IMG/VR virus record: IMGVR_UViG_3300028558_000016
Span: 248,001 to 312,000 of that record
Length of the DNA: 64,000 bases
Direction: 5' to 3' (one strand)
Below are positions 2,249 to 50,243 of the stretch, in pieces. Each line of letters opens with the position of its first letter. Within the stretch, counting starts at the first letter, position 1. The notes below the pieces were generated by a model. It was not told the DNA's origin and did no database searches. It saw only the letters and a program-made list of their open reading frames with translations. Both the position numbers and the translations under genes were made by a program.

Positions 2249-2385
2249 TTTCCATTCTGTGCACATTCTGTGCATATTTTCCATACATCTTATTGAAATT
2301 CAAATGCTTCCAATGGAAGCGTTTTTCTTTTATTCTCGAATATATAGTTATAGAAGTGGCACTCTAAAATTAACTACCATGATCG

Positions 2386-2805
2386 ATGTCAAAGAAATCC
2401 AAGGTATCAAGGTCGGTTGCTGCCAAAAGGAAGTTGAAAGATCATCTTAAGACTCACCTTGGCAAGAATTCTTCTTGTTACTTTACTCCAACGGAGTCAG
2501 TTGCTTGGTATTGGTGGAGAGTCATCAATAAGGCCGCGTTCAAAAACAAACTTCCATATCCAAAAGAAATTGTCATTAGGAAATTAAGAGGAGCATGGGG
2601 AATTTGTGACGGCAAAGCAAGGATGGACATGTGTGTCATAACAATATCGTCAGACATTACAAACAGAAAATTATTCATTGCAACAGTTGCGCATGAAATG
2701 GTTCATCAATGGCAATTCCATTACGCAGCAGGAAACCTACACCACGGATCCAATTTCAGAGATTGGGACGTATACTTTAAAAGAAACTTCGGCATCACTT
2801 TATGA
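2386..2805 (+). CDS. SprT-like zinc metalloprotease
   Basis: INKAAFKNKLP...AHEMVHQWQ...HHGSNF, a typical SprT HExxH plus HG layout. Confidence 0.8.
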   Translation: MSKKSKVSRSVAAKRKLKDHLKTHLGKNSSCYFTPTESVAWYWWRVINKAAFKNKLPYPKEIVIRKLRGAWGICDGKARMDMCVITISSDITNRKLFIATVAHEMVHQWQFHYAAGNLHHGSNFRDWDVYFKRNFGITL

Positions 2806-3029: not shown

Positions 3030-4700
3030 ATGGCAAATATTGATAAGATCACATCGAGCAGCACGGCAGAATACTTCTCAAAGAACCTTCAACAGGTGGG
3101 ATTCTCATCTCACACTAAAGCAGTTTTGACTGTTGTTAAGGAATCTGTAGATAATTCTCTTGATGCCTGCGAAGAAGCTGGAATACTTCCAAACATCAAC
3201 GTCATCATCGAAAAGATGGGACCTGGAACATTAACTGGTTCGGACCAAATTCGTGTTCGAGTGGAAGATAATGGTCCTGGAATAAATCAAGAAGACATTC
3301 AAAAAGTTTTCGGAGAATATCTTTCGTCATCCAAATTCGGAAGAGGTAGATGTTCGAGAGGGCAACAAGGTATAGGAATCTCTGCAGCAACCACATGGGC
3401 CCAATTGACTAATGCGATGGGCGTAAGAGTAATCACAAAAAGGAAAGAGAATAATAAAGCCATAAAATGCCTCGTTGAAGTTGACATCAAAAATAACAAG
3501 GGTGTTATCAAAGATAAGGAGTCAATAACATGGAATAAACCTCATGGCACTTGTGTTGAGTTTATATTTGACGGAAGAATACAAGCCAACGGAGAACTTG
3601 GTTTAATAAACTACCTAACAGGAACCGCACTTGTGAATCCACACATGTCCATGGATTATAAGATCTTTGGATTTGAACAGAAGGTTCTAACCCGAGTAAG
3701 CAATGACATGCCGGAAATTCCAGAGGCAGTCGAACCACATCCACACACTTTAAAACTTGGTGAATTCATAGCGCACTCACACATGTATGGGAAAACTAAA
3801 GTAGACCATTGGTTGAAAAAAGGTTTCTCCAGAATAAACGAAGGCACTCTTAAAGACATTGCTAAGCATGGAGGAAAGGGAATGATGACAAAACAAGTCG
3901 ATAGCTTAAATGATGTCGAACTTAAAACTCTATTTAAAGCAATACAAGATACAAAGCTAATGGCTCCGATGACAAAGAGCGTAATGTCGATTGGAGAGGA
4001 AGCATTTTCAAAAAGCATGAAGAGACTTGGAACAGTAAATTTCTTTTCCATAGTTTCAAGAACTCCTTGCGTATGTGATTTTAAACCAGTTCTTGTGGAA
4101 GTTGCAATTGCTCGTGTGTCAGATGGTGGACCTGAAGATTCATCCGCTCAAGTTCTAAGATTTGCAAACAGAGTTCCTCTTCAGTTTGATAAGTCGTCTT
4201 GCGCAATAGTCAAATCAATTGAGAGCGTAAATTGGAAAGCATACGGATTAAACCAACCAAAGAATTCTCTTCCATTAGGACCATACATCATAGCAGTTTC
4301 AGTTGTTTCTCCTTTCATCAAGTTTAAAAATGCTTCTAAAGAAACAATCGATGCATCAGATGAATTAGTGGAAGAAATAAGAAAAGCATTAATACAAGCA
4401 GGGCAGAGATTATCAAAACACATCAAACATGAGGATAAGGCAGCAGAGCTTGAAAAGAAGTTAAGACACATCGAACAGTTCTGTCCAATATTATTAAATG
4501 GATTGTGTCATATAACAAATGCTTCCAAGACAAGAAGAAATCAAGCAGAAAAAGGTCTTGCCAATCTTCTTGGAAGAGATGCAAAATCGACAAAGCTCGA
4601 ACTTGATCAAGCAACAAAAAGCTTAAACAAGGCTAAAGAAAAAGGAACCATCCAAAATAAAGAAAAAGGATTGGACGAAATAATGGATGATTTAATTTAA
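3030..4700 (+). CDS. top6B: DNA topoisomerase VI subunit B
   Basis: EYFSKNLQQVGF; GHKL motifs KESVDNSLDA, VEDNGPG, SSKF...RGQQGIGIS, HGT; transducer LRFANRVPL and FKNASKE. Confidence 0.93.
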   Translation: MANIDKITSSSTAEYFSKNLQQVGFSSHTKAVLTVVKESVDNSLDACEEAGILPNINVIIEKMGPGTLTGSDQIRVRVEDNGPGINQEDIQKVFGEYLSSSKFGRGRCSRGQQGIGISAATTWAQLTNAMGVRVITKRKENNKAIKCLVEVDIKNNKGVIKDKESITWNKPHGTCVEFIFDGRIQANGELGLINYLTGTALVNPHMSMDYKIFGFEQKVLTRVSNDMPEIPEAVEPHPHTLKLGEFIAHSHMYGKTKVDHWLKKGFSRINEGTLKDIAKHGGKGMMTKQVDSLNDVELKTLFKAIQDTKLMAPMTKSVMSIGEEAFSKSMKRLGTVNFFSIVSRTPCVCDFKPVLVEVAIARVSDGGPEDSSAQVLRFANRVPLQFDKSSCAIVKSIESVNWKAYGLNQPKNSLPLGPYIIAVSVVSPFIKFKNASKETIDASDELVEEIRKALIQAGQRLSKHIKHEDKAAELEKKLRHIEQFCPILLNGLCHITNASKTRRNQAEKGLANLLGRDAKSTKLELDQATKSLNKAKEKGTIQNKEKGLDEIMDDLI

Positions 4701-4704
4701 AACA

Positions 4705-5856
4705 ATGGCAAAAAATAACGACATATCAAAACTAAGCAAGGACATTTGCGAAAGACTTTTGTCAGACTTGGAAAATTCTAAGAGACCAACATTGAAAGCA
4801 ACAAAGTGTTCTTTGGACAATGCTGTGTATGATTTCAAAAAGGGATATTTGACGGCTGGACCAAAGAAAGTAATAACGGAATTGAATGTTAGCTCGGTCA
4901 AGAAGATGGCAAGAACTATATTTGTTCTTAAGATCATTTTAAGAAACATAGAGGTTGGAGCGGTCAACACTAAACGTGAGATTTATTACATCTGCAAAGG
5001 TGAAATAAAACATGATCCTTCGTTGAAACCAATAAACTTTGAAGACCAAAGCGAGTCAGACGAAATAATAGATTTCATTTGTGAGTTATTGGAATGTTAC
5101 AGAGAAGAATTGAATTGCTTCGCCAACGATAGAGGTGGACAAACATATTCGCAAAACCTAATTGTGACCGAAACATTAAATGACGGAACAATTGCAACCA
5201 TAGATCTTTCCAAATTAGGAACAACTCCTTTTCAACCTAAAAACAGACCTCAAAGCTTAAAGCTATCTTCTAACGCAGGAAAGAAGAAACCTGATTTCTG
5301 TTTGATAGTTGAGTCAGAAGGTACTGCCAACACGCTCGTGTCAAACGGTTTCACCAAAAGGAATAATTGCATTTTGTTAGGTGCTCAAGGAGTTCCATCA
5401 AATGCAGTAAGAGGTTGGTGCAAGCTTATACAGGATGATCTTAAAATTCCATTATATTTCTTTGGTGACCTTGACGCATACACCATGCAAAACATTTTCA
5501 GAACGTTGAAAGCCGGATCAGCATCAAGCATTTTAAGGAATGCAGATTTCTCTGCACCCGACGTTAAGTTCCTTGGTGTTCTTCCTAAGGACATAAAGAA
5601 ATACGATCTCAATGATTACCCGGTAAAGACAAGCGATGCTCAGGAAGTAAGAGCTTTGAAGAAAGCTGCTGATGCTTTGAAAAATGATCCTTTCTTTCAA
5701 GACAAGAACAACAAGGGGTTAACTGAGGTGTTGAAATGGTTATTAGTCAATAAGAGACGTTGCGAGCAACAATCTTTCTTCAGTGTTAATCCCAAGGATC
5801 CTATAATGCCAGAGAAGATAATTCTTGACAAGATAAAGAATGGGGATTTCTTATAA
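4705..5856 (+). CDS. top6A: DNA topoisomerase VI subunit A (Spo11-like)
   Basis: TKREIYY catalytic Tyr motif, Toprim VESEG and GDLD, C-terminal CEQQ; immediately after top6B. Confidence 0.9.
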   Translation: MAKNNDISKLSKDICERLLSDLENSKRPTLKATKCSLDNAVYDFKKGYLTAGPKKVITELNVSSVKKMARTIFVLKIILRNIEVGAVNTKREIYYICKGEIKHDPSLKPINFEDQSESDEIIDFICELLECYREELNCFANDRGGQTYSQNLIVTETLNDGTIATIDLSKLGTTPFQPKNRPQSLKLSSNAGKKKPDFCLIVESEGTANTLVSNGFTKRNNCILLGAQGVPSNAVRGWCKLIQDDLKIPLYFFGDLDAYTMQNIFRTLKAGSASSILRNADFSAPDVKFLGVLPKDIKKYDLNDYPVKTSDAQEVRALKKAADALKNDPFFQDKNNKGLTEVLKWLLVNKRRCEQQSFFSVNPKDPIMPEKIILDKIKNGDFL

Positions 5857-5917: not shown

Positions 5918-6715
5918 ATGAGCACAACAACGACAAAAACTAAGAAACAAGTTGCAACATTTAAGATCAAATCACCGAACAATTTCATTTCATTCTTAAA
6001 ACGTTTCTCTCCAATAGAGAAATCACTGTTGCTTGAATTAGCAGAAGATCCTAAGACTCCAGGCACCTATGCAATGGTGGCCAAGTCACATACACCAGAC
6101 AGATCAACAATAAAATACTCTAAGCTTCCATTAACTGAAGTTCTCGAGGGGACAGTGCCTGCAAAGAACTTAAAGGTTGCTTTGCTCGACATCAATAAGG
6201 TAGTAAACGTGTTTAGACATTTCAACGATGGTGATGAGATATTTCTCGACATCTCTTACGATGATGTTAATGATGATACATTTGCTTTCAGTTTAAAATT
6301 CTACACGAAATCATTGAAGATTAATTTGACCTGTGCTGATCCAATTCAGTTCACACATATTTCGGCTGAAGCATTAAAGAGAATTGTGAAGTCTGTGGAT
6401 GATGAAAAGATCCTCGAATTCCCTTTCCCTAAAGAAGCATTCTCGAAAATAAATTCTCTTTGCGGAATTGATGCTGGGGATGATTTACTCAAAATCAAAG
6501 TAACAGCAGAAGGTGAAGTGTTCTTCACAAGCAAATCATTCGAGTATCACATCCTCGATGTACCTGCTGGAAAAGAAGCTAACATGGCATTCTACAACAG
6601 CCAATTCGCTTTCATCGACCAAGAGGTTTCTGCTTTTCACTTAAGCCAAAACAAGTTACTCGTTAAATCAACTGATTCAAACACGATGATCATCGTTGGT
6701 AGAATCGAAAGATAA
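5918..6715 (+). CDS. DNA sliding clamp (T4 gp45-like)
   Basis: 265 aa, FLKRFSPIEKSLL start, two-domain clamp-like pattern, replication-module context. Confidence 0.65.
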   Translation: MSTTTTKTKKQVATFKIKSPNNFISFLKRFSPIEKSLLLELAEDPKTPGTYAMVAKSHTPDRSTIKYSKLPLTEVLEGTVPAKNLKVALLDINKVVNVFRHFNDGDEIFLDISYDDVNDDTFAFSLKFYTKSLKINLTCADPIQFTHISAEALKRIVKSVDDEKILEFPFPKEAFSKINSLCGIDAGDDLLKIKVTAEGEVFFTSKSFEYHILDVPAGKEANMAFYNSQFAFIDQEVSAFHLSQNKLLVKSTDSNTMIIVGRIER

Positions 6716-7729: not shown

Positions 7730-8944
7730 ATGAGCTTTCAATATACACAAATAGATCCAGAAACAGCTACCCCGGAAGAAATTAAGGCCGAGATAGACAG
7801 GATGAAACAACTTTCCAATGAGTGGAAAAACGAAGAACAAGCAGTAAAAATCTTAATTAATTCCATGTATGGTGCTCTTGGAAATAAGTGGCTCGTATGT
7901 TTCAACCCAGACGTTGCTGAGACCGTAACACATCAAGGACAAAACTTCTTCATGCTTGCGGAAAAATCTATAAATCATTATTTCCAAAACATGTGGGTTA
8001 AGGATACAGAGCTTCATGCAAAGCTTGGAATTGTTGGAGAAGTAAAACCCGTAAAAAAACCTGTTGTAATTGCTGGAGACACTGATAGCTGTTATGTTTG
8101 TTGGGACGAAGTAGTGGAGTCTTTCGATTGGGAAGCATCCAATGTTGAAGGTGGACCTCATGGACTCATATTGAAAATAAATGAATTCCGATTTGCTAAC
8201 TTCTTAAACACCGTGTTTGACAGATATGCAGCAAGAGAGAAAACAAAGAACTATCAAGATTTTGAACTCGAGAATATTTCTGAATCTGCTATATGGCTTG
8301 CAAAGAAGAAGTACTTATTGAATGTTGTATGGCAAGATGGAATTGACATCAATACTCTTACTCAGATCACATTCAAGGGAGTTGAATTAGCACAATCATC
8401 AACTCCTGAATTTGCGAGAGAGAAATTAAAAGATCTCGTTAAGTTCGTATTCACAAATAAGAAAGGGTTGAAGCTTAACGACATCATCGGTCTATTAAAA
8501 AAATATAAAGAAGAATTCAAGATAGCTGATCCTCAGAAAGTTTCCATGGGTAGAGGAATAACTGATTATAGCAAATACATTTTGAATGACTCAACTAAAT
8601 TTGAGGTGGCAAGCAAATGTCCAATTCACGTTAGGGCTGCAGGATATTACAATTATTTGCTTAACCAAAATCCAAAATTAAAAAGCAAGTACGAAGTAAT
8701 AAAGGCTGGTGACAAGATTAAATTCTTCCACGCTAAGACAAAGGGATGGTCCGAGAATTTAGCGAGCAACGAAGAGGATGTATTCGCATTTCTTCCAGGA
8801 TCTTTTCCTGTGGAGTTTGCTCCTCCAATTGATTATGATAATCAATTCACTAAAACTATCATTGACCCAATAAATAGGATCACCTCAGCAATGGGACTTC
8901 CAGATATTGGCCCGAATTTATTTATTGCGCATGCGCTTTTCTAA
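7730..8944 (+). CDS. polB: Family B DNA polymerase, C-terminal subunit of a split enzyme (fingers, palm and thumb)
   Basis: KILINSMYG (motif B) near the N-terminus, AGDTDS (motif C), AKKKY, KGVE; no exonuclease domain or motif A. Confidence 0.9.
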   Translation: MSFQYTQIDPETATPEEIKAEIDRMKQLSNEWKNEEQAVKILINSMYGALGNKWLVCFNPDVAETVTHQGQNFFMLAEKSINHYFQNMWVKDTELHAKLGIVGEVKPVKKPVVIAGDTDSCYVCWDEVVESFDWEASNVEGGPHGLILKINEFRFANFLNTVFDRYAAREKTKNYQDFELENISESAIWLAKKKYLLNVVWQDGIDINTLTQITFKGVELAQSSTPEFAREKLKDLVKFVFTNKKGLKLNDIIGLLKKYKEEFKIADPQKVSMGRGITDYSKYILNDSTKFEVASKCPIHVRAAGYYNYLLNQNPKLKSKYEVIKAGDKIKFFHAKTKGWSENLASNEEDVFAFLPGSFPVEFAPPIDYDNQFTKTIIDPINRITSAMGLPDIGPNLFIAHALF

Positions 8945-10275: not shown

Positions 10276-11556
10276 ATGGCAAAAAAAGTAACAACAAAAG
10301 CAGCTTCAACGAAAGCAACAACGTCAAAAGGATTCGACTTCGGAAAATTCGATGCACAGCTATCGAAGATTGAAGGATTCGAAACAGGGTCAATTTTCGA
10401 GAACAATGTATTCTCCGAAGTGGATGAGTGGATCAGCGTAGGAAACTACTTGATGAATGCTCAATTCTCTGGAACATTGTTTGGTGGAATTCCAAACACA
10501 AGAAGCGTAGGATTTGGTGGAGATCCAGGAAGCGGTAAAACGTTCCTGTGTTTGAACATCGTACGCGAAGCACAAAAGACAGGATACTTTGTATTCTATT
10601 GTGACACAGAAGGAGCAGTGGATAGAGAACAAGCAACAAACTTTGGGATTGACACATCGAAAGTAAGGTATCAACCTATCAAGACGATTTCTCAATTCAA
10701 AACATTTGTGGTCACTGTTATTGGAATGTTGAAAGAAGAAAAGAAAAAACGTCCAGACAATGATCCGCCTAAGTTCATGATTGTGTTAGACTCTCTTGGA
10801 ATGTTAACCACAGACAAGGAACAAAAAGATGCAATCGCAGGACACAACGCGCAAGACATGGGGTCTAAAGCTAAGGAGCTTCGTTCATTGTTTAGAAACA
10901 TCACGTTAGACCTTGCAGAACACAGAGTTCCATTAATATGTACAAACCACTCTTCGTGGGGAGGTATGATGGCACCTAAGACTGTATCAGGTGGTGACGG
11001 TCCAATTTTTGCAATGTCTCTTTTGTCGATGTTAAGCACAAAACAATTGAAAGAAGGTGATGTTAAAACTGGAATCATTGTTAAGAGCAGCATGAAGAAA
11101 AGCAGATTTGCTATTCCAAGATCAATCGAAATTCACATATCATTCTTGAAAGGAATGAATCCTTTCGTTGGTCTTGAGCACTTTATAAGCTGGGAAAATT
11201 GTGGAGTGGAAAGAGGAACTATCCTAACTGCAAAAGAAGCAACAAAACAAAAAGTGGATGGAGAAGCTTACAAGACAACCTTAGTCGATGAAGAGACTGG
11301 AGAAATGTCAGAAGTTGATTTAGTGTTTGTGGCTAAAGCGACTGCAAAAACATTCGCAGTAAAACATCTTGGCAAAAATGTTTCTCCCAAAGAATTATTT
11401 TCTGAGAAAGTGTTTACTCTTGAAGTTTTAAAACAGTTAGACGAAAACGCCATCAAGCCTTACTTCTCATTCCCTTCAAAAGAAGAAGCAGAAGCGCAAG
11501 AAGCAGCACAGTACGAAGAAGTTTTAGATTCAGATGATTCTGAGTCTGAAGATTAA
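10276..11556 (+). CDS. uvsX: RecA/UvsX-like recombinase
   Basis: Walker A GDPGSGKT, CDTEGA, IVLDSLG, ICTNH, SGG, KSRF; acidic C-terminal tail. Confidence 0.9.
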   Translation: MAKKVTTKAASTKATTSKGFDFGKFDAQLSKIEGFETGSIFENNVFSEVDEWISVGNYLMNAQFSGTLFGGIPNTRSVGFGGDPGSGKTFLCLNIVREAQKTGYFVFYCDTEGAVDREQATNFGIDTSKVRYQPIKTISQFKTFVVTVIGMLKEEKKKRPDNDPPKFMIVLDSLGMLTTDKEQKDAIAGHNAQDMGSKAKELRSLFRNITLDLAEHRVPLICTNHSSWGGMMAPKTVSGGDGPIFAMSLLSMLSTKQLKEGDVKTGIIVKSSMKKSRFAIPRSIEIHISFLKGMNPFVGLEHFISWENCGVERGTILTAKEATKQKVDGEAYKTTLVDEETGEMSEVDLVFVAKATAKTFAVKHLGKNVSPKELFSEKVFTLEVLKQLDENAIKPYFSFPSKEEAEAQEAAQYEEVLDSDDSESED

Positions 11557-26090: not shown

Positions 26091-28211
26091 ATGAACGGTG
26101 CTCAATTAAAAATCAAACAAATCAAGGGTCTCAACGCAGAGCTCGCTGATAAGCTTTCAAAGAGTTTAGGCGGAACTGTTACCGGACCATTGACGATAGG
26201 TGGACCATTAGTGGTCACTGGGCCAACCATCATAAACACTGATCTTTCTTTACAAGGAGCTATAGTGGATTTTTATGGAAGTCCTGGACCTCCAGGATGG
26301 GTGCTAACCTCCACAGGAACAGCAACACAATGGGTGGATCCTTTAGGACCATTAGGTGTTTCAGGATTTAGTGGAACATCAGGTATCTCAGGTTACAGCG
26401 GAACATCAGGTGTTTCTGGTTACACAGGTGTAAGCGGTTATTCAGGTGTAAGCGGATTCTCTGGATATTCCGGAGACAGCGGTACAAGTGGAACAACAGG
26501 TATTTCAGGAACAAGCGGTGTTTCAGGTTTTTCTGGATACTCAGGCGTATCAGGATACTCTGGAACTTCTGGTATTTCAGGAACGAGCGGTATAAGTGGA
26601 ACAACAGGTGTAAGCGGATTTTCAGGATACACTGGAGCTTCAGGAACTTCTGGATTTACTGGTGTGTCAGGTTTTTCTGGATACTCAGGCGTGAGTGGTT
26701 TTTCTGGATACACAGGAACTTCTGGTATTTCAGGAACAAGCGGTATTAGTGGAACTTCTGGAATTTCTGGATACAGTGGTGTTTCAGGTTTTTCTGGTGT
26801 TAGTGGATGGTCAGGATCAAGCGGTATTTCTGGATTCAGTGGTTATTCAGGTGTAAGTGGATTCACAGGTGTGAGCGGTTACACTGGTGTTTCTGGATTC
26901 ACTGGAACTTCTGGTATTTCTGGATCATCTGGATATTTTGGACAAGATGGTATGTCAGGTTTTTCTGGATTCTCTGGATTCGGAATTTCTGGTTACTCAG
27001 GATATTCTGGAAACAATGGAGTTGCCGGTGGAGCTTTATACTATTTAAGAGATGAAGACTCAGATGTCCCAGGCTTTAAAGAATTAGATATAAATCCAGA
27101 TGGAATAGATCCTGAAGGATCTTATACAGCTGCTTGCGATAATACAACCGGCGAAGTATTAATAAAACAATTCTTAACTTTTCCATCAAACCCAGATCAG
27201 CTTTATATTTCAGGTGGTTCATGGATATTCGATACTTATGCCTCAGTAGACAACTCAGGCGGAGTTTCAAATATCGTAATAAGATTTTACAAGAGAGATC
27301 AATTTGGTATTGAGACTGAATTGTTCAACGTAACGACTGCAGAGATAAATGTCGTATCTCCTACATTATTTTCAAAAGAAATTCTCCAAGGAGAATTCAA
27401 TATAGCATTAACTGATAGATTATTAGTAAAGTATTTTGCAAAAACTACTTCAACGACAACAATTAACGTCAGCATTTATTTAGAAGGAAATACGCATGCA
27501 ACACATATTCACTCTCCTGTATCTTTCATAGGAGCTTCAGGTTTCTCTGGATGGTCAGGTTTTAGTGGAACTTCAGGAACTTCTGGATTCACAGGAGTTT
27601 CAGGATTTACGGGTGTGAGCGGATATAGCGGTGTTTCAGGTTTTTCTGGTGTAAGCGGATTCACAGGTGTCAGTGGTGTTTCAGGTTTCTCTGGATATTC
27701 TGGAACAAGTGGAACATCTGGTTATAGTGGAACATCTGGTTTTTCAGGCGTGTCAGGTTACTCTGGAACTTCTGGATTCTCTGGATATTCTGGAACATCA
27801 GGCTTCACAGGCGTCAGCGGTTTCTCAGGTATTTCTGGAGACTCAGGTGTTAGCGGATTCACAGGAGCAAGTGGAACATCCGGTTTTTCAGGCGTGTCAG
27901 GTTACTCTGGAACTTCTGGATTCTCTGGATATTCTGGAACAAGTGGAACATCCGGTTATAGTGGATTTAGCGGAGTTTCTGGATATTCTGGTGTAAGTGG
28001 ATTCTCAGGTGTTTCAGGATTTAGCGGATACTCAGGAACATCCGGATTCTCTGGTTACAGCGGAACAAGTGGATTTACCGGTGTCAGTGGATTCAGCGGC
28101 GTTAGCGGATTTTCAGGAACCTCTGGATTATCTGGAACTTCTGGATTTTCAGGAACCTCTGGATTTGATGCAGGTATTCTTGCATTGATCATCAATAGTC
28201 TTGGCTTGTAA
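26091..28211 (+). CDS. Collagen-like (Gly-X-Ser)n fibre protein with a central globular domain
   Basis: Two long [12 protein letters not shown] tracts flanking a roughly 170 aa beta-rich domain. Confidence 0.75.
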   Translation: MNGAQLKIKQIKGLNAELADKLSKSLGGTVTGPLTIGGPLVVTGPTIINTDLSLQGAIVDFYGSPGPPGWVLTSTGTATQWVDPLGPLGVSGFSGTSGISGYSGTSGVSGYTGVSGYSGVSGFSGYSGDSGTSGTTGISGTSGVSGFSGYSGVSGYSGTSGISGTSGISGTTGVSGFSGYTGASGTSGFTGVSGFSGYSGVSGFSGYTGTSGISGTSGISGTSGISGYSGVSGFSGVSGWSGSSGISGFSGYSGVSGFTGVSGYTGVSGFTGTSGISGSSGYFGQDGMSGFSGFSGFGISGYSGYSGNNGVAGGALYYLRDEDSDVPGFKELDINPDGIDPEGSYTAACDNTTGEVLIKQFLTFPSNPDQLYISGGSWIFDTYASVDNSGGVSNIVIRFYKRDQFGIETELFNVTTAEINVVSPTLFSKEILQGEFNIALTDRLLVKYFAKTTSTTTINVSIYLEGNTHATHIHSPVSFIGASGFSGWSGFSGTSGTSGFTGVSGFTGVSGYSGVSGFSGVSGFTGVSGVSGFSGYSGTSGTSGYSGTSGFSGVSGYSGTSGFSGYSGTSGFTGVSGFSGISGDSGVSGFTGASGTSGFSGVSGYSGTSGFSGYSGTSGTSGYSGFSGVSGYSGVSGFSGVSGFSGYSGTSGFSGYSGTSGFTGVSGFSGVSGFSGTSGLSGTSGFSGTSGFDAGILALIINSLGL
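26352..27010 (+). repeat. Coding 9-nt-period Gly-X-Ser repeat tract (limits approximate)
   Basis: Translation [14 protein letters not shown]... Confidence 0.85.
27531..28165 (+). repeat. Coding Gly-X-Ser repeat tract containing an exact 60-nt direct repeat
   Basis: 27738-27797 is identical to 27882-27941 (144 nt apart). Confidence 0.85.
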
Positions 28212-28233
28212 AGATCAAAATATATAAAAGAGA

Positions 28234-29001
28234 ATGATCAGGTTAGACACAGTAAATAAGTCGATTAGAATTTATTCGGATGCTACAGCAACTACGAATG
28301 AACCAAATTATGCAACATCATGGGATGACATAAGAGTGGTAAACCCGCAGTTCACGCCAGGCAGTCAAGATGGAGCTTTAAATGGAACAACGCCGATTGC
28401 AGTAATTTCTGCGCCGGCTTCTTCAATATACAGAAATATAAAATACATCCATGTTGCGAATGTAGACACAGTTCAACACGTAATAACAGTTGAGCTTTTA
28501 AATAATGGAACACAAAGAACTCTTTTAAAAGTAACGCTTGGAATAGGAGAAGAATTAATATTCAACGATGGTTCTGGCTGGATGACGTTAGACAATATTG
28601 GCGAACTGAAAATCACCGGTAATTCCGGAGCTAACATCAAGGTTGGTCAAATAGGTTTCGGCATCGATAACAATGGAAGTGTATTAACAACAGGAACAAA
28701 AGCTTATGCAGTAGTCCCTTTCTCAGGAACGATAGTCTCATGGGAATTGTTTTCAGATGTTGCAGGAAACGTTGTGATAGATGTTTGGAAAGCTCCCTAT
28801 GCGAGTTATCCGCCAACAGTGGCAAACACCATAACAGGAACAGATAAGCCAACGCTCTCTTCTCAACAGAAGAATGTTGACACGGTTCTTACTGGATGGG
28901 GAAACCAAGTAGTCAATGCAGGAGATATTTTTGCGTTCAATATAGATTCAGTATCAACGATAACGAGACTCAACGTGAGCCTCAAAATAATTAAAGACTA
29001 A
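28234..29001 (+). CDS. Virion/fibre-associated protein, paralog of 31300..32691
   Basis: Shared roughly 130 aa N-domain MIRLDT.NKS.RI.SDATATT.EP; C-domain DVWKAPYASYPPT. Confidence 0.7.
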   Translation: MIRLDTVNKSIRIYSDATATTNEPNYATSWDDIRVVNPQFTPGSQDGALNGTTPIAVISAPASSIYRNIKYIHVANVDTVQHVITVELLNNGTQRTLLKVTLGIGEELIFNDGSGWMTLDNIGELKITGNSGANIKVGQIGFGIDNNGSVLTTGTKAYAVVPFSGTIVSWELFSDVAGNVVIDVWKAPYASYPPTVANTITGTDKPTLSSQQKNVDTVLTGWGNQVVNAGDIFAFNIDSVSTITRLNVSLKIIKD

Positions 29002-29005
29002 AAGC

Positions 29006-31132
29006 ATGTCAAAGAAAGCAATAGATTTCGTATTCACAGGAGCAACCACACCAATCGCTTCTTACGATTCAACAAAGACCAACATTGGAACTTTGATCAA
29101 ACAATATACAGGAGCTCTCGCAACAGATAAGTTTGCAGGCCCAGAAATAGTTTCTGTCGCAAGACCAGGTGAAGCTTCCACTTCCATATTCGGAGGATTT
29201 CCATATATCGTACAATTTTCTACGACAATTGATTGGGTTTTCCTTGCAGAAAACTCTGCTGCCGCTGTGACAAGAAGAATAATCTGGTATGAATTTAATA
29301 AGACTACTCAAGTCTTTACGTGGAAAGGATTCATCACACTAACATACCCAGCTGCGACCGCACACACCATAAGAGGTTTAAGCGTAACAAAAGATAATTA
29401 CACCACTGGAACTGTAGCCGTCTCAGGAACTACTGTGACTGGAACAGGTTCTTTATGGTTAACTGAACCACAATCATTAGGTTCAAGAATAGGATTTGGA
29501 ACAACCGATCCAACCGCTGTAACAACGTGGTTTGAAATCTCTGCTATAGGATCAGACACATCCATAACATTAACATCAACTGCAGGAAGCATACCTGCTG
29601 GAACTGCTTATGTCATTGAAGATTTAAGAGTCTATACTGCGACAACAAATGCTACATTAACCAATGGCGGTTTATTTGTTACTAAAGGTTTAAGAATAGA
29701 AAACTTTTCAACGGGTGGAACAACAATTTCAGCTGCTGTAACAACCGATAACATAAGAGCTGTTTACTGGTTGGCTGATGCTTCAACTGTCACAAATACT
29801 GTAGCAGGTGGTTTATATGTCGACACGAGATCTTCATGGACTAACCAAGTTGCTTACATCGTCAACGTGACAGCTGCGACAACTCCAGCTATTTATGTCT
29901 ATAATACAAGAGCAGCCTTAACGCTTGCCGCAGGAAAAGACACAACAACAAACACCATAAAGACCGGAGTTCAAACCGTAACAGGTAACGTTTCTCAGGT
30001 AGGAAATGGAATTCTTGCAACGCTTTCTCATGGACCCGGTTCAGGAGTTAAGTGTCTTTATTTTGCAACAACCTCAAGAATAATCAGAGTAGACCTTGCA
30101 AATATTACCGCAGCTTCTACAACTTTCGTATCAGACTCGATGGTTGAGGTTCCACCAGGATCTTCGACAACATATCCTTTGACTGCAGTAATGTCTCATG
30201 TTTTATATTCTTCGATGATCGACAGACTTGTAATTCTTACGACCTCAGCAGCAGGACAAAGAGGTTATGTTACACAATACAACACGACCTCAGCACAATT
30301 CGATCACATATTTTTAATAGATGACAAGAACCAGGATCAATCAACTGCTGCGGTAGGATCAATTCCTTATCCATCTCTTTCAAACACGCAGATGGTAGGA
30401 GGGATGCTAAATGGAAGAATGTTTATTGTAAGAAACTCTGCTGCGGCAACTTTAAACCAGATGTACAATCTTCCAATAGGAGCACATTGGGCTTATACTT
30501 CTACATCAAATCAGGTCTTGATAACTCCAAGCATTCCAACAACGAATGCCTTGAAATTCTATAGACTTTATGTAAACGAGATAAAAAGATTAGGAACAGA
30601 TCCTTATGTAATTCAACCGGAACCTTACAAAATGTATGCAAGAACTTCTGGTATTTCTACAAATTTAGGAACATGGACTCTCATAAACGATGATGGAGAT
30701 CTTTCAGGATTAACACCTACTTCCGAAATACAAATCAAATTGGAATTCAACATTCTTGGAAGATATTGCATTCCTTCGAGAATAATGTCTTTGGCAGTCG
30801 TCTTTGAAGACACCACGACGGATTCACACTATGAACCTTCTATCGCGAACTCGAATGTTTCTACAAACGTATTCGCCTTCAGACAATCAACGGCTTTCGG
30901 ATCAAACATCCCTAACTTAAGGATTCAATTGTTCAACGCTGTAACAGGAGTTCCTATAATAGATGACAACGTAACGTCTTCAGCTTTTGGAACTTTCCAG
31001 TATTCTTCTAACAACGGATTATCGTGGAATGCATGGAGCAATACCCAGGATGTTGTAGGAAATTACATAAGATATACAGCAACTTCTCTGCCAGGATCTA
31101 CGAGAATTAGAGCTCTATTGACGCAAGCATAA
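29006..31132 (+). CDS. Large Thr-rich beta-structured virion/tail protein
   Basis: 708 aa, T/S/G/A-rich; YTTGTVAVSGTTVTGTG tail-protein-like motif. Confidence 0.65.
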   Translation: MSKKAIDFVFTGATTPIASYDSTKTNIGTLIKQYTGALATDKFAGPEIVSVARPGEASTSIFGGFPYIVQFSTTIDWVFLAENSAAAVTRRIIWYEFNKTTQVFTWKGFITLTYPAATAHTIRGLSVTKDNYTTGTVAVSGTTVTGTGSLWLTEPQSLGSRIGFGTTDPTAVTTWFEISAIGSDTSITLTSTAGSIPAGTAYVIEDLRVYTATTNATLTNGGLFVTKGLRIENFSTGGTTISAAVTTDNIRAVYWLADASTVTNTVAGGLYVDTRSSWTNQVAYIVNVTAATTPAIYVYNTRAALTLAAGKDTTTNTIKTGVQTVTGNVSQVGNGILATLSHGPGSGVKCLYFATTSRIIRVDLANITAASTTFVSDSMVEVPPGSSTTYPLTAVMSHVLYSSMIDRLVILTTSAAGQRGYVTQYNTTSAQFDHIFLIDDKNQDQSTAAVGSIPYPSLSNTQMVGGMLNGRMFIVRNSAAATLNQMYNLPIGAHWAYTSTSNQVLITPSIPTTNALKFYRLYVNEIKRLGTDPYVIQPEPYKMYARTSGISTNLGTWTLINDDGDLSGLTPTSEIQIKLEFNILGRYCIPSRIMSLAVVFEDTTTDSHYEPSIANSNVSTNVFAFRQSTAFGSNIPNLRIQLFNAVTGVPIIDDNVTSSAFGTFQYSSNNGLSWNAWSNTQDVVGNYIRYTATSLPGSTRIRALLTQA

Positions 31133-31150
31133 AAATAAAATATTAAAAAT

Positions 31151-31300
31151 ATGCCAGTAGATGATATAGTTTTCCAAAGCAATCCACCATTCATTTTAGA
31201 AGTTCCCGCACAGACACCAGGAACAATAAGAGCATTATCGCTTGATGGAGTATTCGATTTTACAAATGCTACTGAAATAATAACGATTCAAATCAGCTAA
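31151..31300 (+). CDS. Small protein (49 aa, not in the ORF track)
   Basis: MPVDDIVFQSNPPF...ITIQIS; TAATG-coupled to the next gene. Confidence 0.5.
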   Translation: MPVDDIVFQSNPPFILEVPAQTPGTIRALSLDGVFDFTNATEIITIQIS

Positions 31301-32691
31301 TGATTAGATTAGACACCATAAACAAATCACTAAGGATCTTCTCAGATGCCACAGCAACGACAACAGAACCAGTCTTTGTTACGGCATTCGATGACATCAA
31401 TTCCACGACTCCGGTGTTAACGCCTGGAAGCAGTGATGGTGCAACTGTTGGAAATACTCCACAAACTGCAGTAGCTTCTCCGGTAGCTTCCATCTACAGA
31501 AATGTAAAATATGTAAACGTATTCAACAGTGACACAGTTTCACACGTCATCACCGTTGAACTATTAAACAATGCTACCACCAGAACCTTAATAAAAGTAA
31601 CACTTAAAACGAGTGAGCAATTAATATACAATGATGGAGATGGCTGGGGAGTTATCACAGCTTTAGGAGAAAAGAAAGTAACCGGTGTTTCAGGATTCAG
31701 TGGATTCTCAGGAGTTTCTGGAATTGGAACCTCAGGATTTTCTGGATATTCTGGAGTAAGCGGCTTCTCAGGTGTTTCAGGTTTTTCTGGAATTTCTGGA
31801 TATTCCGGTGTTTCTGGATTCTCTGGAACCTCAGGATTTTCTGGATATTCTGGAGTAAGCGGTTATTCTGGTGTCAGCGGATTCTCTGGTTATTCTGGAG
31901 TTTCTGGATTTACTGGAGTCTCCGGACAAACAGGTGTTTCGGGTTTCTCTGGAATTTCTGGTCAATCTGGCGTTAGCGGATTCACAGGAGTTTCTGGATT
32001 TTCCGGCTACACAGGCGTTTCAGGTTTTACGGGTGTTAGCGGATTTTCAGGCATTTCTGGTGATTCAGGTGTTAGTGGTTTTACTGGATATTCTGGAATT
32101 TCTGGATACAGCGGAACTTCCGGTTTCTCTGGATATTCTGGAATAAGTGGAACTTCAGGCATCTCAGGTTTTACAGGAGTAAGCGGTTACACAGGTGTTT
32201 CAGGTTTCACGGGAGTCAGCGGATTCTCTGGATATTCTGGAGTGTCGGGCTATTCCGGAACTTCAGGATTCTCAGGTTATTCCGGTACTTCCGGCTTCAC
32301 AGGAACCTCAGGTTTTTCTGGAATTTCTGGAGATCCTTCTCTTGGATTAATCACAATGAGAGCATCAAGAGCTTCAGCAAATACCACAAACATTTATCTG
32401 AGAGATATGGATGGCAATCCAATGAACCAAGCTCCTTTGGTGATGCCATACAATGGAACGATAATAAATATTTCTGCATCATCTAACACTGCTGGTCCTG
32501 GCGCATGGTCTGCAGAAGTAAGAGATAATGGAACTTTAATAGCAGGAGCAGTGATAAATATGACAGCAGTTCAAACATCAAACTTTGGAACATATTCGGT
32601 GAACGTTAATGCTGGTGCACTTCTAATGATATTCATGACAGGAACTTCCATAGATAGACCTGCAATAACAGTATTAATAAAGAGAAGATAA
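31300..32691 (+). CDS. Collagen-like (Gly-X-Ser)n fibre protein
   Basis: Paralogous N-domain, repeat tract at about 31684-32331, C-terminal beta domain. Confidence 0.75.
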   Translation: MIRLDTINKSLRIFSDATATTTEPVFVTAFDDINSTTPVLTPGSSDGATVGNTPQTAVASPVASIYRNVKYVNVFNSDTVSHVITVELLNNATTRTLIKVTLKTSEQLIYNDGDGWGVITALGEKKVTGVSGFSGFSGVSGIGTSGFSGYSGVSGFSGVSGFSGISGYSGVSGFSGTSGFSGYSGVSGYSGVSGFSGYSGVSGFTGVSGQTGVSGFSGISGQSGVSGFTGVSGFSGYTGVSGFTGVSGFSGISGDSGVSGFTGYSGISGYSGTSGFSGYSGISGTSGISGFTGVSGYTGVSGFTGVSGFSGYSGVSGYSGTSGFSGYSGTSGFTGTSGFSGISGDPSLGLITMRASRASANTTNIYLRDMDGNPMNQAPLVMPYNGTIINISASSNTAGPGAWSAEVRDNGTLIAGAVINMTAVQTSNFGTYSVNVNAGALLMIFMTGTSIDRPAITVLIKRR

Positions 32692-32699
32692 ACATATAA

Positions 32700-34937
32700 A
32701 TGGCTCCATATTTTAAAATAACTACAACAGGAACAAGCCCATCAACGGTCATTTTATATGATCTTGGTGAGAGAACTTTTACACATCCTACTGTAGATTT
32801 AGATCTTCTTTTAGAATTTTCTTTAGAAGAAATCCAGAATTCTCTGGATCTTATTACTGCAATAGATGCTGGAAGATTAACGGCAAATTTAGACGGAACA
32901 TCCGTAACTACTGCCGATCAATTCTATGCAAACCTCACGAGCGTTTCAGGATATTCTGGAATAAGTGGAACTTCAGGATTCTCTGGATACTCAGGGGTTT
33001 CTGGATATTCTGGAACTTCTGGAATAAGTGGAACATCAGGAATTTCTGGATATTCCGGAGTTTCTGGTTACACGGGCGTTTCAGGTTTTAGCGGCGTATC
33101 AGGTTTTTCTGGCGTAAGCGGATGGTCAGGAACATCGGGAATTTCTGGGTTTAGTGGAATTTCTGGATGGTCGGGAACAAGCGGAATTTCAGGAACCTCT
33201 GGTATTTCAGGAACTTCAGGAGTATCCGGATTTTCAGGAACCTCTGGATATTCTGGAACTTCCGGCTTCTCAGGTTACTCAGGAACCTCAGGTTTTTCTG
33301 GATATTCTGGAATAAGTGGAACATCAGGAATCTCCGGATTTTCTGGAGTTTCAGGTTTCACTGGAGTATCTGGTCTATCGGGTTTCTCTGGAAAAGCAGA
33401 CAGATATTTAACTTCCTCAACAACTTCTTTAACGATACCTGTTGGATCTCCAGCAGTGCAAACATTAACCGTTGAAGCAGGATTAGCATATTCAGTTGGA
33501 CAAGGCATTGTAGTTGCAAATGATTCAACACATTTATTCACAGGAGAAGTTCAATCTTACAATAATGTTTCTGGAGTTTTAGTTGTTATAGTTCAAACAG
33601 AATTAGGAACAGGAACATTTACTTCATGGACAGTTAACCTCGACGGAGTTCAAGGCGTTCAAGGAAATTCCGGTATTTCTGGATTTTCTGGAATAGCCGT
33701 ATCAGGTTTCTCTGGATATTCTGGTGTTAGCGGTTTTAGTGGAGTTTCTGGATTTACAGGAGTTTCTGGTTATTCTGGCTTCACAGGAGTTTCAGGATTC
33801 AGCGGATATTCTGGTGTGAGCGGTTACAGTGGAACATCAGGATTTTCTGGTGTTTCAGGTTTTTCAGGTTACAGCGGAGTCTCTGGATTTTCTGGAGTTT
33901 CAGGTTATTCTGGAACATCAGGCGTTAGCGGATTTTCAGGAATTAGCGGATATAGTGGAACTTCAGGTTTCACAGGAACTTCAGGCGTATCAGGTTATTC
34001 AGGCGTATCAGGTTTCACGGGAGTCTCCGGATTTAGTGGATATTCTGGTGTTAGCGGATTCACAGGTGTGAGCGGTTATTCCGGATTTTCTGGTGTGAGC
34101 GGTTACAGTGGAACATCGGGTTACTCAGGAACTTCCGGTTATTCTGGAACTTCTGGTACATCCGGTTTTTCGGGAGTTAGTGGATATTCTGGAGTTTCAG
34201 GATTTACCGGAGCTTCAGGTGTCTCTGGATTTAGCGGTGTTTCTGGTTACAGTGGAACATCAGGATTTAGTGGATATTCTGGAGTGAGCGGATATAGTGG
34301 AACTTCCGGTTTCTCTGGATATTCCGGTGTTTCAGGTTATTCTGGAGTTTCAGGATTTACCGGAGCTTCAGGTGTTTCAGGATTCACTGGAGCAAGCGGT
34401 GTTTCAGGTTTTTCAGGCGTGAGTGGATTCTCTGGATATTCTGGAGTTTCTGGATTCTCAGGTACATCTGGAAAGAGCGGATTTTCTGGAGTTTCTGGAA
34501 ATCCTCCGACATCTTCTTATGCAGAAATGTACATGACTGGTAATGGAACTGCGACAGCAGTTGTTACTGTTTCTGTTCCATTAAAAGTTGCAGGAACTAC
34601 GACAGCAGGAGATAAGACTTCTGATTGGACCCATGCTTCTAATAAGCTAACATATACCGGAACAACTACACAGGAGTTCTTCTTGAATGTTTCTTTCTCA
34701 GCAAATTCTGCTTCGGCTTCAAAGAGCTTTAGCTTCTTTGTTTACAAGAATGGTTCAGCTGTTTCAAAGTCTCAGATCAATAACTTCTTAAGAAGTTCTG
34801 GTGATGATTTTGCTGGAGGCGTTTCATGTTTGATCTCTTTAGCAACAAATGATTTTGTTGAACTGTGGACACAGAACAATACTTCGGCATCGGATGTTAC
34901 GGTATCTTATATGAATTTTAACCTTACAAGAATATAA
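32700..34937 (+). CDS. Collagen-like (Gly-X-Ser)n fibre protein with a C1q/TNF-like head
   Basis: Two repeat tracts around [13 protein letters not shown]...GLAYSVGQ; C-terminal [13 protein letters not shown]. Confidence 0.75.
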
Positions 34938-34938
34938 A

Positions 34939-41711: not shown

Positions 41712-41726
41712 CTGAGGGTTTTTTTA
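41700..41726 (+). terminator. Terminator at the convergence of the plus and minus blocks
   Basis: aaccctca-atgac-tgagggtt followed by a T tract. Confidence 0.75.
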
Positions 41727-42134
41727 TTTTTTTGATATTGATTCTTCGAGTTCGTTTACCCAATCAGGCTTTGCAGATACAAGAACAACTATTTCATCTG
41801 TGTTTTCAACAAACTCCAATGAATTTTCTTTAGAATTCAAATTCATTCCAAATTTTTTATTTATTACATTTATAAATTCTTTTTCTGTTTCATAGTGTTT
41901 TTTTATCCAAGCTTCATTTATTCTATCAAATTCAGTTTCTTTTAACAGATCTTCTTTTGGAAATACATTTCCGATCTCTTCTGTAGACATTTCATTTAAT
42001 TCAGAAGTGATTCTTATCTGATAAGCGAGATCATCTGATATTTCCATAGAAAAACATTCCACATCTTTAATTTTTTCAATAAAAAATGGATCGCCTTCAT
42101 TATCAGGATCTAAATATATTTTAACTTGTTTCAT
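41724..42134 (-). CDS. Hypothetical protein
   Basis: Start moved to ATG 42134 (MKQVKIYL), ATGA-coupled. Confidence 0.55.
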   Translation of the reverse strand: MKQVKIYLDPDNEGDPFFIEKIKDVECFSMEISDDLAYQIRITSELNEMSTEEIGNVFPKEDLLKETEFDRINEAWIKKHYETEKEFINVINKKFGMNLNSKENSLEFVENTDEIVVLVSAKPDWVNELEESISKK

Positions 42135-42316
42135 TGTTCTTCTTCTCTTGCAAGCCATGCCCACAGAAGTCCAAGTGGAACTCCAAACATTCCTGCAATC
42201 ATTAATGCCTTTTCTGTCGTAACATCTTTCCTTGCTAATGATCCTATGCATGATATAACCACCACAACAAGGAACACGCTCCAGTTAAACGATTTAAAGT
42301 ATTTTATTATTTTCAT
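42131..42316 (-). CDS. Small two-TM membrane protein
   Basis: Two hydrophobic helices. Confidence 0.55.
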   Translation of the reverse strand: MKIIKYFKSFNWSVFLVVVVISCIGSLARKDVTTEKALMIAGMFGVPLGLLWAWLAREEEQ

Positions 42317-43082: not shown

Positions 43083-43083
43083 A

Positions 43084-44731: not shown

Positions 44732-44732
44732 T

Positions 44733-45224: not shown

Positions 45225-45226
45225 CG

Positions 45227-46533: not shown

Positions 46534-46538
46534 ATTAA

Positions 46539-47774: not shown

Positions 47775-47777
47775 AAT

Positions 47778-50227: not shown

Positions 50228-50243
50228 CAGTGATAATTAGAAA

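What the first reader, a model, noticed from the sequence alone, without database searches (positions are those of the whole stretch)
3030..5856. Complete two-subunit topoisomerase VI in a phage replication module
Seen: intact top6B (GHKL motifs) and top6A (REIYY Tyr, Toprim E and DxD), directly upstream of the clamp and close to polB and uvsX. Established: T4-like phages use type IIA topoisomerases (gp39/52/60); topo VI (type IIB) is typical of archaea, plants and a few bacterial lineages. Inference: the SSTAEYFSKNLQQVGF start reminds me of bacterial Bdellovibrionota/Myxococcota-type Top6B, implying acquisition from a lineage other than the probable host. It may functionally replace the usual phage topoisomerase and would not be a target of gyrase-type inhibitors.
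Basis: partly seen in the sequence, partly recalled or inferred. Interest (0 to 1): 0.8.

Follow-up and report, generated by a model that had tools for sequence, protein, structure and literature searches.

The report
Huge phage carrying topoisomerase VI
A 482-kb bacteriophage carries, inside its DNA-replication gene cluster, an intact two-subunit topoisomerase VI captured long ago from Bdellovibrionota-type bacteria; in the papers I could search, this enzyme is reported only from cellular chromosomes, not from viruses.

Summary
ORFs 3030-4700 (Top6B, 556 aa) and 4705-5856 (Top6A, 383 aa) are intact and align end to end with solved archaeal topo VI. Every catalytic residue I checked is present.

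The window is part of IMG/VR contig IMGVR_UViG_3300028558_000016 (482,156 bp), a tailed huge phage. The gene order SprT-like > Top6B > Top6A > sliding clamp > PolB > UvsX recurs in more than ten independent metagenome contigs, so this is not a chimera.

In that phage clade both genes are under strong purifying selection (dN/dS 0.03-0.07). Their codon composition has shifted to match the phage.

The only close cellular relatives (73-81% identity for A, 57-71% for B) are Bdellovibrionota. The phage sequences form one clade on a long stem. The best tree nests it among non-Oligoflexales Bdellovibrionota, but a basal position is not rejected (AU p = 0.27).

The phage uses leaders without Shine-Dalgarno motifs, as Lak phages of Bacteroidota do, whereas the donor lineage uses them. 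This gives some support to the idea that donor and host differ.

No phage-embedded topo VI turned up in 50,697 GenBank phages, in PHROGs, elsewhere in IMG/VR, or in the literature I searched. Whether it replaces a type IIA enzyme is untested, because only about 69 kb of the 482 kb was examined.

The parts
2302..2324 (+). Terminator-like hairpin followed by a T-run. It is the last one on the + strand before 8811, so SprT-like through PolB may be one transcription unit.
   Evidence: consensus scan only, so this is an inference.
2386..2805 (+). SprT-like zinc metalloprotease (139 aa, HEMVH motif at residues 103-107). It sits directly upstream of Top6B in every phage-clade contig.
   Evidence: Pfam SprT-like 1.8e-8. 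Motif seen. Synteny. No homologue within +-6 kb of cellular top6 loci.
3030..4700 (+). top6B: GHKL ATPase, H2TH and transducer domains, then a ~60-aa Lys/Glu-rich tail. There is no M. mazei-type C-terminal domain.
4705..5856 (+). top6A: 5Y-CAP/winged helix with R91 and Y95, Toprim E203/D255/D257, and T2BI box R352-E354-S357.
5918..6715 (+). Sliding clamp (PCNA/gp45 fold), divergent in sequence.
   Evidence: Atlas structure match TM 0.73-0.75 to PCNA and gp45 clusters. 80-85% conserved in the phage clade. Homologue next to PolB in huge phage LR756500.
7730..8944 (+). Family-B DNA polymerase, C-terminal (palm/thumb) part only. The N-terminal/exonuclease part is not in the window.
   Evidence: PHROG 1918/262 at 1e-68, matching profile positions 491-839 of 856. 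Pfam DNA_pol_B. Best tblastn hits are huge phages and Lak at ~36% identity.
10276..11556 (+). UvsX/RecA-type recombinase.
   Evidence: PHROG 97 at 8e-52, Pfam RecA.

Best explanation
The two genes most likely encode a working A2B2 type IIB topoisomerase (topo VI), made by the phage together with its replication proteins.

Expected mechanism, from established topo VI biochemistry:
- ATP binding dimerises the Top6B GHKL domains and traps one DNA duplex.
- The transducer, through switch lysine K437, signals to Top6A.
- Top6A Y95, with Mg2+ held by E203/D255/D257, cuts a second duplex.
- The first duplex passes through the break and the break is resealed.

In the phage this would relax supercoils and unlink the tangled replication products of a 482-kb genome before packaging.

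Origin: the two-gene cassette was captured once, long ago, from the Bdellovibrionota-type topo VI lineage. It was inserted upstream of a conserved clamp-PolB-UvsX core and has since been inherited vertically in a narrow clade of huge phages.

Shown here: gene integrity, catalytic residues, phage context, single origin, purifying selection, adaptation of composition and of translation leaders.

Inferred: enzymatic activity, the role in replication and decatenation, and co-transcription.
For: Identity and intactness:
- Pfam domains and full-length alignments to solved topo VI.
- All catalytic, ATPase and T2BI residues are invariant in phage and cellular copies.
- Only three conservative phage-fixed changes per subunit at otherwise conserved sites.

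Function retained in the phage:
- dN/dS is 0.026-0.068 between phage copies, with synonymous sites near saturation.
- Top6A is 90-95% conserved between contigs whose PolB is 75-84% and UvsX 53-92% identical, and the order of relatedness is the same for all three.

Adaptation to the phage:
- GC3 is 0.21-0.38 against a cellular median of 0.60.
- 63 of 80 cellular top6A genes have a Shine-Dalgarno motif upstream; the phage copy has none, like the rest of the phage genome.

Phage context:
- Conserved synteny in independent assemblies.
- No terminator-like site between 2324 and 8811.
- Distant relative LR756500 keeps clamp-PolB-UvsX but has ribonucleotide reductase and an ATP-grasp gene where topo VI sits here. 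No flanking phage gene is found near cellular top6 loci.

Single origin from the Bdellovibrionota type:
- Phage clade supported 100/100 on a stem of 0.60 substitutions per site.
- It lies inside the non-Oligoflexales clade at 98/86 in the careful concatenated tree. The separate A and B trees agree.
- The next cellular family outside this group is only 54% identical, then 34% or less.
Against: - No biochemical or expression data exist.
- Only ~69 kb of the 482 kb could be examined. The phage may also carry a type IIA enzyme, in which case topo VI would be an addition and not the main decatenase.
- The nested placement is not statistically secure. A tree with the phage clade outside all cellular sequences is only 6.4 lnL units worse (AU p = 0.27). 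With distant outgroups it was even preferred over a shallow search.
- The long stem, especially for Top6B (0.72), could reflect some change of function.
Confidence: 0.75

Rival explanations
1. The enzyme is mainly a conflict or bypass device and not the phage's routine decatenase. It would supply type II topoisomerase activity that is insensitive to gyrase/topo IV poisons, to the phage's own shut-off of host topoisomerases, or to host defences that target type IIA enzymes. This overlaps with the main explanation.
For: Topo VI has a different DNA-cleavage subunit from gyrase and topo IV (established knowledge). The cassette is a clade-specific addition to an older replication core. T4-type and jumbo phages normally use type IIA enzymes.
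Against: No toxin, inhibitor or defence gene was recognised next to it. It sits in the middle of replication genes. Nothing here tells this role apart from a plain replicative one.
Confidence: 0.12
2. Top6A/B acts like Spo11, making programmed double-strand breaks that feed UvsX-dependent, recombination-primed replication, and does not pass strands.
For: UvsX lies 4.4 kb downstream in the same orientation. Top6A is the ancestor of Spo11.
Against: Top6B keeps the full ATPase motifs, the H2TH region and the switch lysine. According to PMC11302465 these features are lost or degraded in the Spo11 partners. The protein is nearly indistinguishable from the cellular enzymes.
Confidence: 0.04
3. The transfer went the other way. 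A phage lineage carried this divergent topo VI first and donated it to an ancestor of Bdellovibrionota.
For: The AU test does not reject the phage clade lying outside all sampled cellular sequences. The Bdellovibrionota enzyme is strongly divergent from other topo VI (54%, then 34% or less). Its B subunit was flagged as anomalously placed in PMC11302465.
Against: The best careful tree nests the phage clade inside non-Oligoflexales Bdellovibrionota at 98/86. The phage is closer to those cells than to Oligoflexales. The phage clade is narrow (85-99% identity for A), while the cellular family spans the phylum. The 54% outgroup sits in a cellular-looking context. Related huge phages lack the cassette.
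Confidence: 0.07
4. It is an artefact: a mis-assembly joining phage and Bdellovibrionota DNA, or a cellular contig wrongly called viral.
For: IMG/VR does contain such cases. The only other contig with the Top6B G2-box motif (L090) is a prophage-chromosome junction whose topo VI belongs to the host.
Against: The same junctions on both sides appear in more than ten independent contigs from four data sources. Composition is uniform across the region. The genes are ameliorated and lack Shine-Dalgarno motifs like their neighbours. The phage clade is distinct from every cellular sequence.
Confidence: 0.01

Closest known systems
Chromosomal topoisomerase VI of Bdellovibrionota (for example B. bacteriovorus Bd2864/Bd2865 and Oligoflexus tunisiensis)
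   Same: Same two-gene B>A cassette and same lengths. Identity is 73-81% for A and 57-71% for B. All catalytic residues are identical.
   Different: The phage copy is phage-borne and flanked by an SprT-like gene and a sliding clamp. It sits on a long private branch, its GC3 has shifted to phage values, and the Shine-Dalgarno motif before top6A has been lost.
Archaeal topo VI with solved structures (M. mazei 2Q2E, S. shibatae 2ZBK, M. jannaschii Top6A 1D3Y)
   Same: Same domain order and active-site residues. The alignments are end to end (E = 4e-85 for B, 3e-32 for A).
   Different: Identity is only ~25-45%. The M. mazei-type C-terminal domain of Top6B is missing, replaced by a short charged tail.
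T4-type phage topoisomerase II (gp39/gp60/gp52, type IIA), the usual type II enzyme of T4-like and jumbo phages
   Same: Presumably the same job (ATP-dependent strand passage during phage replication) and the same genomic neighbourhood type. The GHKL ATPase fold is shared (PHROG 543 hit at 8.5e-10 over residues 28-185 of Top6B).
   Different: The cleavage subunit is unrelated. T4 gp39 finds nothing in the window. Jumbo-phage surveys list only type IIA-like and type IB enzymes.
Mini-A (viral stand-alone Top6A-like proteins) and Topo VIII (plasmid-borne fused type IIB enzymes)
   Same: They are type IIB relatives carried by mobile elements.
   Different: Mini-A has no B subunit and has an xWELDAL box. 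Topo VIII is a single B-A fusion with an RVELNAM box. Here there are two separate full-length subunits, and the T2BI box has the topo VI form, R-C-E-Q-Q-S.

Membership tests
Topoisomerase VI (type IIB), A subunit | 5Y-CAP/winged-helix domain with a catalytic tyrosine and its partner arginine | tested here: met
   Pfam TP6A_N 6e-16. R91 and Y95 align to M. jannaschii R99 and Y103 and are invariant across diverse Top6A and in all phage and cellular copies.
Topoisomerase VI (type IIB), A subunit | Toprim domain with the acidic Mg2+-binding residues E...DxD | tested here: met
   Pfam TOP6A-Spo11_Toprim 1e-37. E203, D255 and D257 are invariant.
Topoisomerase VI (type IIB), A subunit | T2BI box of the topo VI/Spo11 form (R/K-x-E-x-x-A/S), not RVELNAM or xWELDAL | tested here: met
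   R352-C-E354-Q-Q-S357. R and E are invariant; S in phages, A or S in cells.
Topoisomerase VI (type IIB), B subunit | A separate B subunit with the GHKL/Bergerat ATPase motifs (N-box, G1, G2) | tested here: met
   Pfam HATPase_c. E38, N42, D80/G82/G84 and G111/G114/G116 are invariant.
Topoisomerase VI (type IIB), B subunit | An H2TH region and a transducer domain with the switch lysine. These distinguish true Top6B from the meiotic Top6B-like proteins. | tested here: met
   Topo-VIb_trans 2e-44 over the full profile. The alignment to M. mazei Top6B runs continuously through residues ~228-310. K437 is invariant. The H2TH criterion comes from PMC11302465.
Topoisomerase VI (type IIB) | Adjacent, co-oriented B then A genes | tested here: met
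   4-nt gap in the window; -1 and 8 nt in related phages; mostly -4 to +5 nt in cells.
Topoisomerase VI (type IIB) | A2B2 assembly and ATP-dependent relaxation and decatenation | not testable with these tools
   Needs purified protein.
T4-type topoisomerase II (type IIA; gp39/gp52/gp60) | A GyrB-like ATPase-Toprim subunit plus a GyrA-like cleavage subunit | tested here: not met
   The only similarity is the shared GHKL fold (PHROG 543). T4 gp39 tblastn against the window plus L001 gives nothing below E = 3. No such Pfam or PHROG hit in any window ORF of 200 aa or more.
Mini-A | A stand-alone A-like protein without a B subunit, with an xWELDAL box | tested here: not met
   A full B subunit lies immediately upstream, and the box is RCEQQS.
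Topo VIII | A single polypeptide fusing the B and A moieties, with an RVELNAM box | tested here: not met
   Two ORFs separated by a stop codon, and the box is RCEQQS.

The most novel reading that the evidence does not exclude
This would be the first canonical topo VI encoded by a virus, and it would serve as the phage's only type II topoisomerase. It would have crossed phyla: from predatory Bdellovibrionota into a huge phage whose host initiates translation without Shine-Dalgarno motifs, probably a Bacteroidota. One conceivable route is an encounter between predator, prey and phage inside the same prey cell. A still bolder version, not excluded by the AU test, is that this phage lineage is sister to the oddly divergent Bdellovibrionota topo VI and could have been its vector.
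Probability: 0.22. Interest if true: 0.75.

Novelty: new member of a known kind. Interest (0 to 1): 0.6.

Why it matters
Published frameworks for type IIB topoisomerases assign Topo VIII to plasmids, Mini-A to viruses and topo VI to non-mobile chromosomal genes (PMC7671362, PMC11302465). A conserved, selected, complete topo VI inside a phage replication module is an exception to that scheme. It shows that canonical topo VI can travel on viruses. That bears on how topo VI reached scattered bacterial lineages and on the long-running idea that topoisomerases move between viruses and cells.

It also offers a natural test of whether a type IIB enzyme can support replication of a very large phage genome in a bacterial cell. 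The phage enzyme is small and soluble-looking and has many natural variants available for biochemistry. The Bdellovibrionota signal in a phage that otherwise looks like a relative of Bacteroidota phages is a lead on host range or on cross-phylum gene flow.

Tried and rejected
1. 'Nested in Bdellovibrionia' from quick trees. An AU test with distant outgroups actually favoured the phage clade lying outside all cells. After adding a closer outgroup (L091) and running a careful concatenated search, the nested tree is best, but the basal alternative is still not rejected. I therefore report the donor only as 'Bdellovibrionota-type lineage'.

2. Host = Bdellovibrionota, assumed simply because the donor is. 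This was weakened by the Shine-Dalgarno contrast and by PolB affinity to predicted Bacteroidetes phages.

3. Host probes that gave no signal:
- Atlas search of the upstream OmpA/NMT1 binding protein and ABC ATPase; both families are already common in phages.
- CCA-adding enzyme homologues, which form a smooth phage continuum.
- Bin names of NCBI-deposited clade members; none were available.
- Pfam domains of the tail fibres; collagen repeats only.
- tblastn of all window ORFs against 0.85 Mb of Bdellovibrionota DNA; only top6 matched.

4. Enrichment of the Bacteroidota promoter motif TAnnTTTG. There was none in the window, but also none in the Lak-A2 control, so the test is uninformative.

5. 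IMG/VR scan with a diverse Top6A alignment failed for lack of conserved stretches. The narrower A and B alignments found only the window's own contig. The G2-box DNA pattern found one more contig, which proved to be host DNA beside a prophage integrase.

6. Single-sequence AlphaFold model of the putative clamp was too poor to use (pLDDT 44). The Atlas model was used instead.

7. The crAssphage control could not be fetched under two accessions.

8. I did not walk the rest of the 482-kb contig to look for a type IIA enzyme. The remaining look-ups would have added at most ~100 kb.
Full report
**What is there.** The window has two adjacent + strand ORFs at exactly the reported coordinates: 3030-4700 (556 aa) and 4705-5856 (383 aa), 4 nt apart.

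The first carries Pfam HATPase_c and a full-length Topo-VIb_trans domain (2e-44). The second carries TP6A_N and TOP6A-Spo11_Toprim (1e-37).

Against solved structures, Top6B aligns over residues 8-498 with M. mazei Top6B (E = 4e-85), through the GHKL, H2TH and transducer regions. Top6A aligns with M. jannaschii and S. shibatae Top6A (3e-32, 6e-22).

The functional residues are all present:
- Top6B: E38, N42, D80/G82/G84, K102, G111/G114/G116 and the switch lysine K437.
- Top6A: R91, Y95, E203, D255, D257.

In an alignment of diverse Top6A proteins, Y95 is invariant and Y94 is not. R91 and Y95 correspond to M. jannaschii R99 and Y103.

The C-terminal T2BI box, which PMC7671362 uses to separate topo VI from Topo VIII and Mini-A, has the topo VI form, R352-C-E354-Q-Q-S357.

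**What genome this is.** The window is part of IMG/VR contig IMGVR_UViG_3300028558_000016, 482,156 bp. It is a tailed phage:
- four large collagen-repeat tail-fibre genes (PHROG E down to 1e-109; Pfam Collagen);
- a T4-type family-B polymerase fragment and UvsX;
- a 265-aa protein whose Atlas model superposes on PCNA and gp45 clamps at TM 0.73-0.75.

Its polymerase is only ~36% identical to the best database hits. Those hits are the 634-642 kb metagenomic huge phages and Lak megaphages. There is no nucleotide-level match to any deposited phage.

**Not a chimera.** Homologues at 81-99% identity occur on more than ten short-to-medium contigs from JGI, ENA, Logan and NCBI.

Where context is available, the order is always SprT-like > Top6B > Top6A > ~257-aa clamp > ... 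> PolB > ... > UvsX. One contig has a terminase 6 kb upstream.

GC content is uniform across the junctions (0.38 and 0.37 against 0.375 for the window). No flanking phage gene has a homologue within 6 kb of any of 80 cellular top6 loci.

The distant huge phage LR756500 keeps the clamp-PolB-UvsX core. Upstream of the clamp it has ribonucleotide reductase and an ATP-grasp gene. So the two-gene cassette is an insertion specific to a narrow phage clade.

**Functional in the phage.**
- Between phage copies, dN/dS is 0.026-0.068 for both genes, while synonymous sites are nearly saturated.
- All catalytic residues are invariant in 10 (A) and 9 (B) phage-context sequences. Only three conservative phage-fixed substitutions per subunit fall at sites that are 95% or more conserved in cells.
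- Top6A is better conserved among clade members (90-95%) than PolB (75-84%) or UvsX (53-92%). The order of relatedness is the same for all three, as expected for vertical inheritance.
- GC3 has drifted to phage values (0.21-0.38 against a cellular median of 0.60).
- No terminator-like site lies on the + strand between 2324 and 8811. Co-transcription with the clamp and polymerase is therefore plausible, but this is an inference.

**Where it came from.** In a 5.8-billion-protein search, everything outside the phage clade above ~66% identity that carries a name is Bdellovibrionota.

In one genome per GTDB species there are 390 relatives. The best 80 (73-81% identity) are Bdellovibrionia, Bacteriovoracaceae and Oligoflexia MAGs plus the isolate Oligoflexus tunisiensis. 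A few odd labels look like old names or binning errors.

An exhaustive representative search shows the family is sharply bounded. The next full-length relative is 54% identical, then 34% or less.

The phage sequences form one clade in the A, B and concatenated trees (support 100). The stems are long: 0.38 for A, 0.72 for B, 0.60 concatenated.

The careful concatenated tree is rooted with the 54% relative, which comes from a cellular-looking contig. It puts Oligoflexales at the base and the phage clade inside the remaining Bdellovibrionota at 98/86. Pairwise identities agree with this placement.

However, the AU test does not reject a tree with the phage clade outside all sampled cellular sequences (delta lnL 6.4, p = 0.27). 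With very distant outgroups that tree even beat a shallow free search.

I therefore claim a single old capture from the Bdellovibrionota-type lineage, not a specific donor. I keep the reverse direction as a low-probability rival.

**Host.** A donor is usually a host, but an independent signature points elsewhere. I scored each gene start, taken as the first ATG, for a 4-mer Shine-Dalgarno (SD) motif at -18 to -4. The first four rows are the phages of interest, the last four the comparison sets.

| Sequence set | Genes with SD motif | Random background |
|---|---|---|
| Window phage | 1 of 56 (2%) | 13% |
| Two related phage contigs | 0 of 25 | 8% |
| Lak-A2 (Prevotella host) | 2-3% | 6% |
| LR756500 | 7% | 8% |
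| T4 (E. coli host) | 48% | 5% |
| 80 Bdellovibrionota loci | 31% | 11% |
| Low-GC Bdellovibrionota loci | 37% | 8% |
| Cellular top6A genes | 63 of 80 | not applicable |

The phage top6A leader is A-rich with no SD motif.

PMC7162821 predicts Bacteroidetes hosts for the genomes above 634 kb and for the Lak phages, which are this phage's nearest PolB relatives. The same paper cautions that huge phages encoding S1-like proteins rarely have SD motifs, so the trait may belong to the phage and not the host.

Other host probes gave nothing. My rough split is:
- host from an SD-poor lineage such as Bacteroidota: ~0.5;
- Bdellovibrionota: ~0.3;
- other: ~0.2.

**Is it known?**
- Top6A has no tblastn hit in 50,697 GenBank phage records and no PHROG family.
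- Protein-pattern scans of 2.9 million IMG/VR contigs with A and B alignments returned only this contig.
- A DNA pattern for the near-universal Top6B G2 box found one other contig. There the topo VI genes lie beyond a serine-recombinase integrase and a transketolase, so they are host DNA next to a prophage.
- PMC7671362 assigns topo VI to 'non-mobile chromosomal' genes and only Mini-A to viruses.
- The 2024 distribution survey PMC11302465 mentions viruses only for Mini-A. The Asgard-virus preprint reports Mini-A only.
- A detailed jumbo-phage comparison lists only type IIA-like and type IB topoisomerases.
- No paper in the library links topo VI with huge or jumbo phages.

Within these limits, a phage-encoded canonical topo VI appears undocumented.

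**What remains open.** No type IIA topoisomerase is present in the window plus 5 kb upstream. Activity, expression and host are all inferred.

**Verdict.** This is a real, intact, selected topo VI in a huge-phage replication module. The enzyme itself is ordinary. Its carrier is new, and the donor and host may be different phyla.

Noticed in passing
whole window (56 scored gene starts); also L082, L084: The genome almost completely lacks Shine-Dalgarno motifs: 2% of starts against 13% random background. Leaders are A-rich (50% A). Lak-A2 looks the same; T4 (48%) and the Bdellovibrionota loci (31-37%) do not.
   Followed up: yes
window 2386-2805 (+): An SprT-like zinc protease with an intact HEMVH motif is conserved immediately upstream of Top6B in all phage-clade contigs and absent near cellular top6 loci. 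SprT/Spartan-family proteases clear DNA-protein crosslinks, so it might remove trapped Top6A-DNA adducts. This is speculation.
   Followed up: partly
window 7730-8944 (+) and 51916-52632 (-): The family-B polymerase ORF covers only the palm/thumb half (profile positions ~491-839). No N-terminal/exonuclease half is in the window. A separate 238-aa PolB-exonuclease-like/RNase H-fold ORF lies 43 kb away on the other strand.
   Followed up: no
window 55353-56801 (+): A 482-aa protein with a C-terminal PARP catalytic domain (Pfam PARP 4.6e-26).
   Followed up: no
window 48786-49916 (-), 59328-60485 (+), 61110-62501 (+): A cluster of RNA/nucleotide enzymes: an RlaP-type nucleotidyltransferase, a CCA-adding/poly(A) polymerase-family enzyme whose homologues form a continuum across other 370-440 kb contigs, and a cytidylyltransferase-like protein.
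   Followed up: partly
window 26091-36963 (+): Five consecutive large genes of 463-745 aa. Four carry long collagen triple-helix repeats, presumably tail fibres. GC is higher here (~0.41) and AT skew is reversed compared with the flanks.
   Followed up: no
L001 280-4610 (contig 242,984-247,314, just upstream of the window): The phage carries a 611-aa binding protein fused to an OmpA domain (NMT1/phosphonate-binding-like fold), an ABC permease, an ABC ATPase and a UPF0114 protein. The same block is in L082 and the P0004 contig. The Atlas shows these families are common in Uroviricota.
   Followed up: partly
window 41724-52632: A block of genes on the minus strand with reversed GC and AT skew. 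It includes a PHROG 'transposase' (43084-44055), a DnaJ-domain protein (44733-45224) and an AAA ATPase resembling a clamp loader (46539-47774).
   Followed up: no
L090 (IMGVR_UViG_3300037657_000197, first 14.5 kb): This IMG/VR 'viral' contig ends in a large serine recombinase followed by transketolase, Top6B and Top6A of a high-GC bacterium. It is a prophage-host junction, so its topo VI is not viral.
   Followed up: yes
L094 (LR756500.1 243,734-262,438): In this 462-kb huge phage, the clamp-PolB-UvsX core is interrupted by DUF7487/REase-like (homing-endonuclease-type) ORFs. The neighbouring ribonucleotide reductase is split and shows an intein signature.
   Followed up: no
L091 / L092 (Logan contigs): A second, cellular-looking lineage of Bdellovibrionota-like topo VI, only 54% identical in Top6A, sits next to an SfsA gene. 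It is the sole intermediate between this family and all other topo VI (34% or less).
   Followed up: partly
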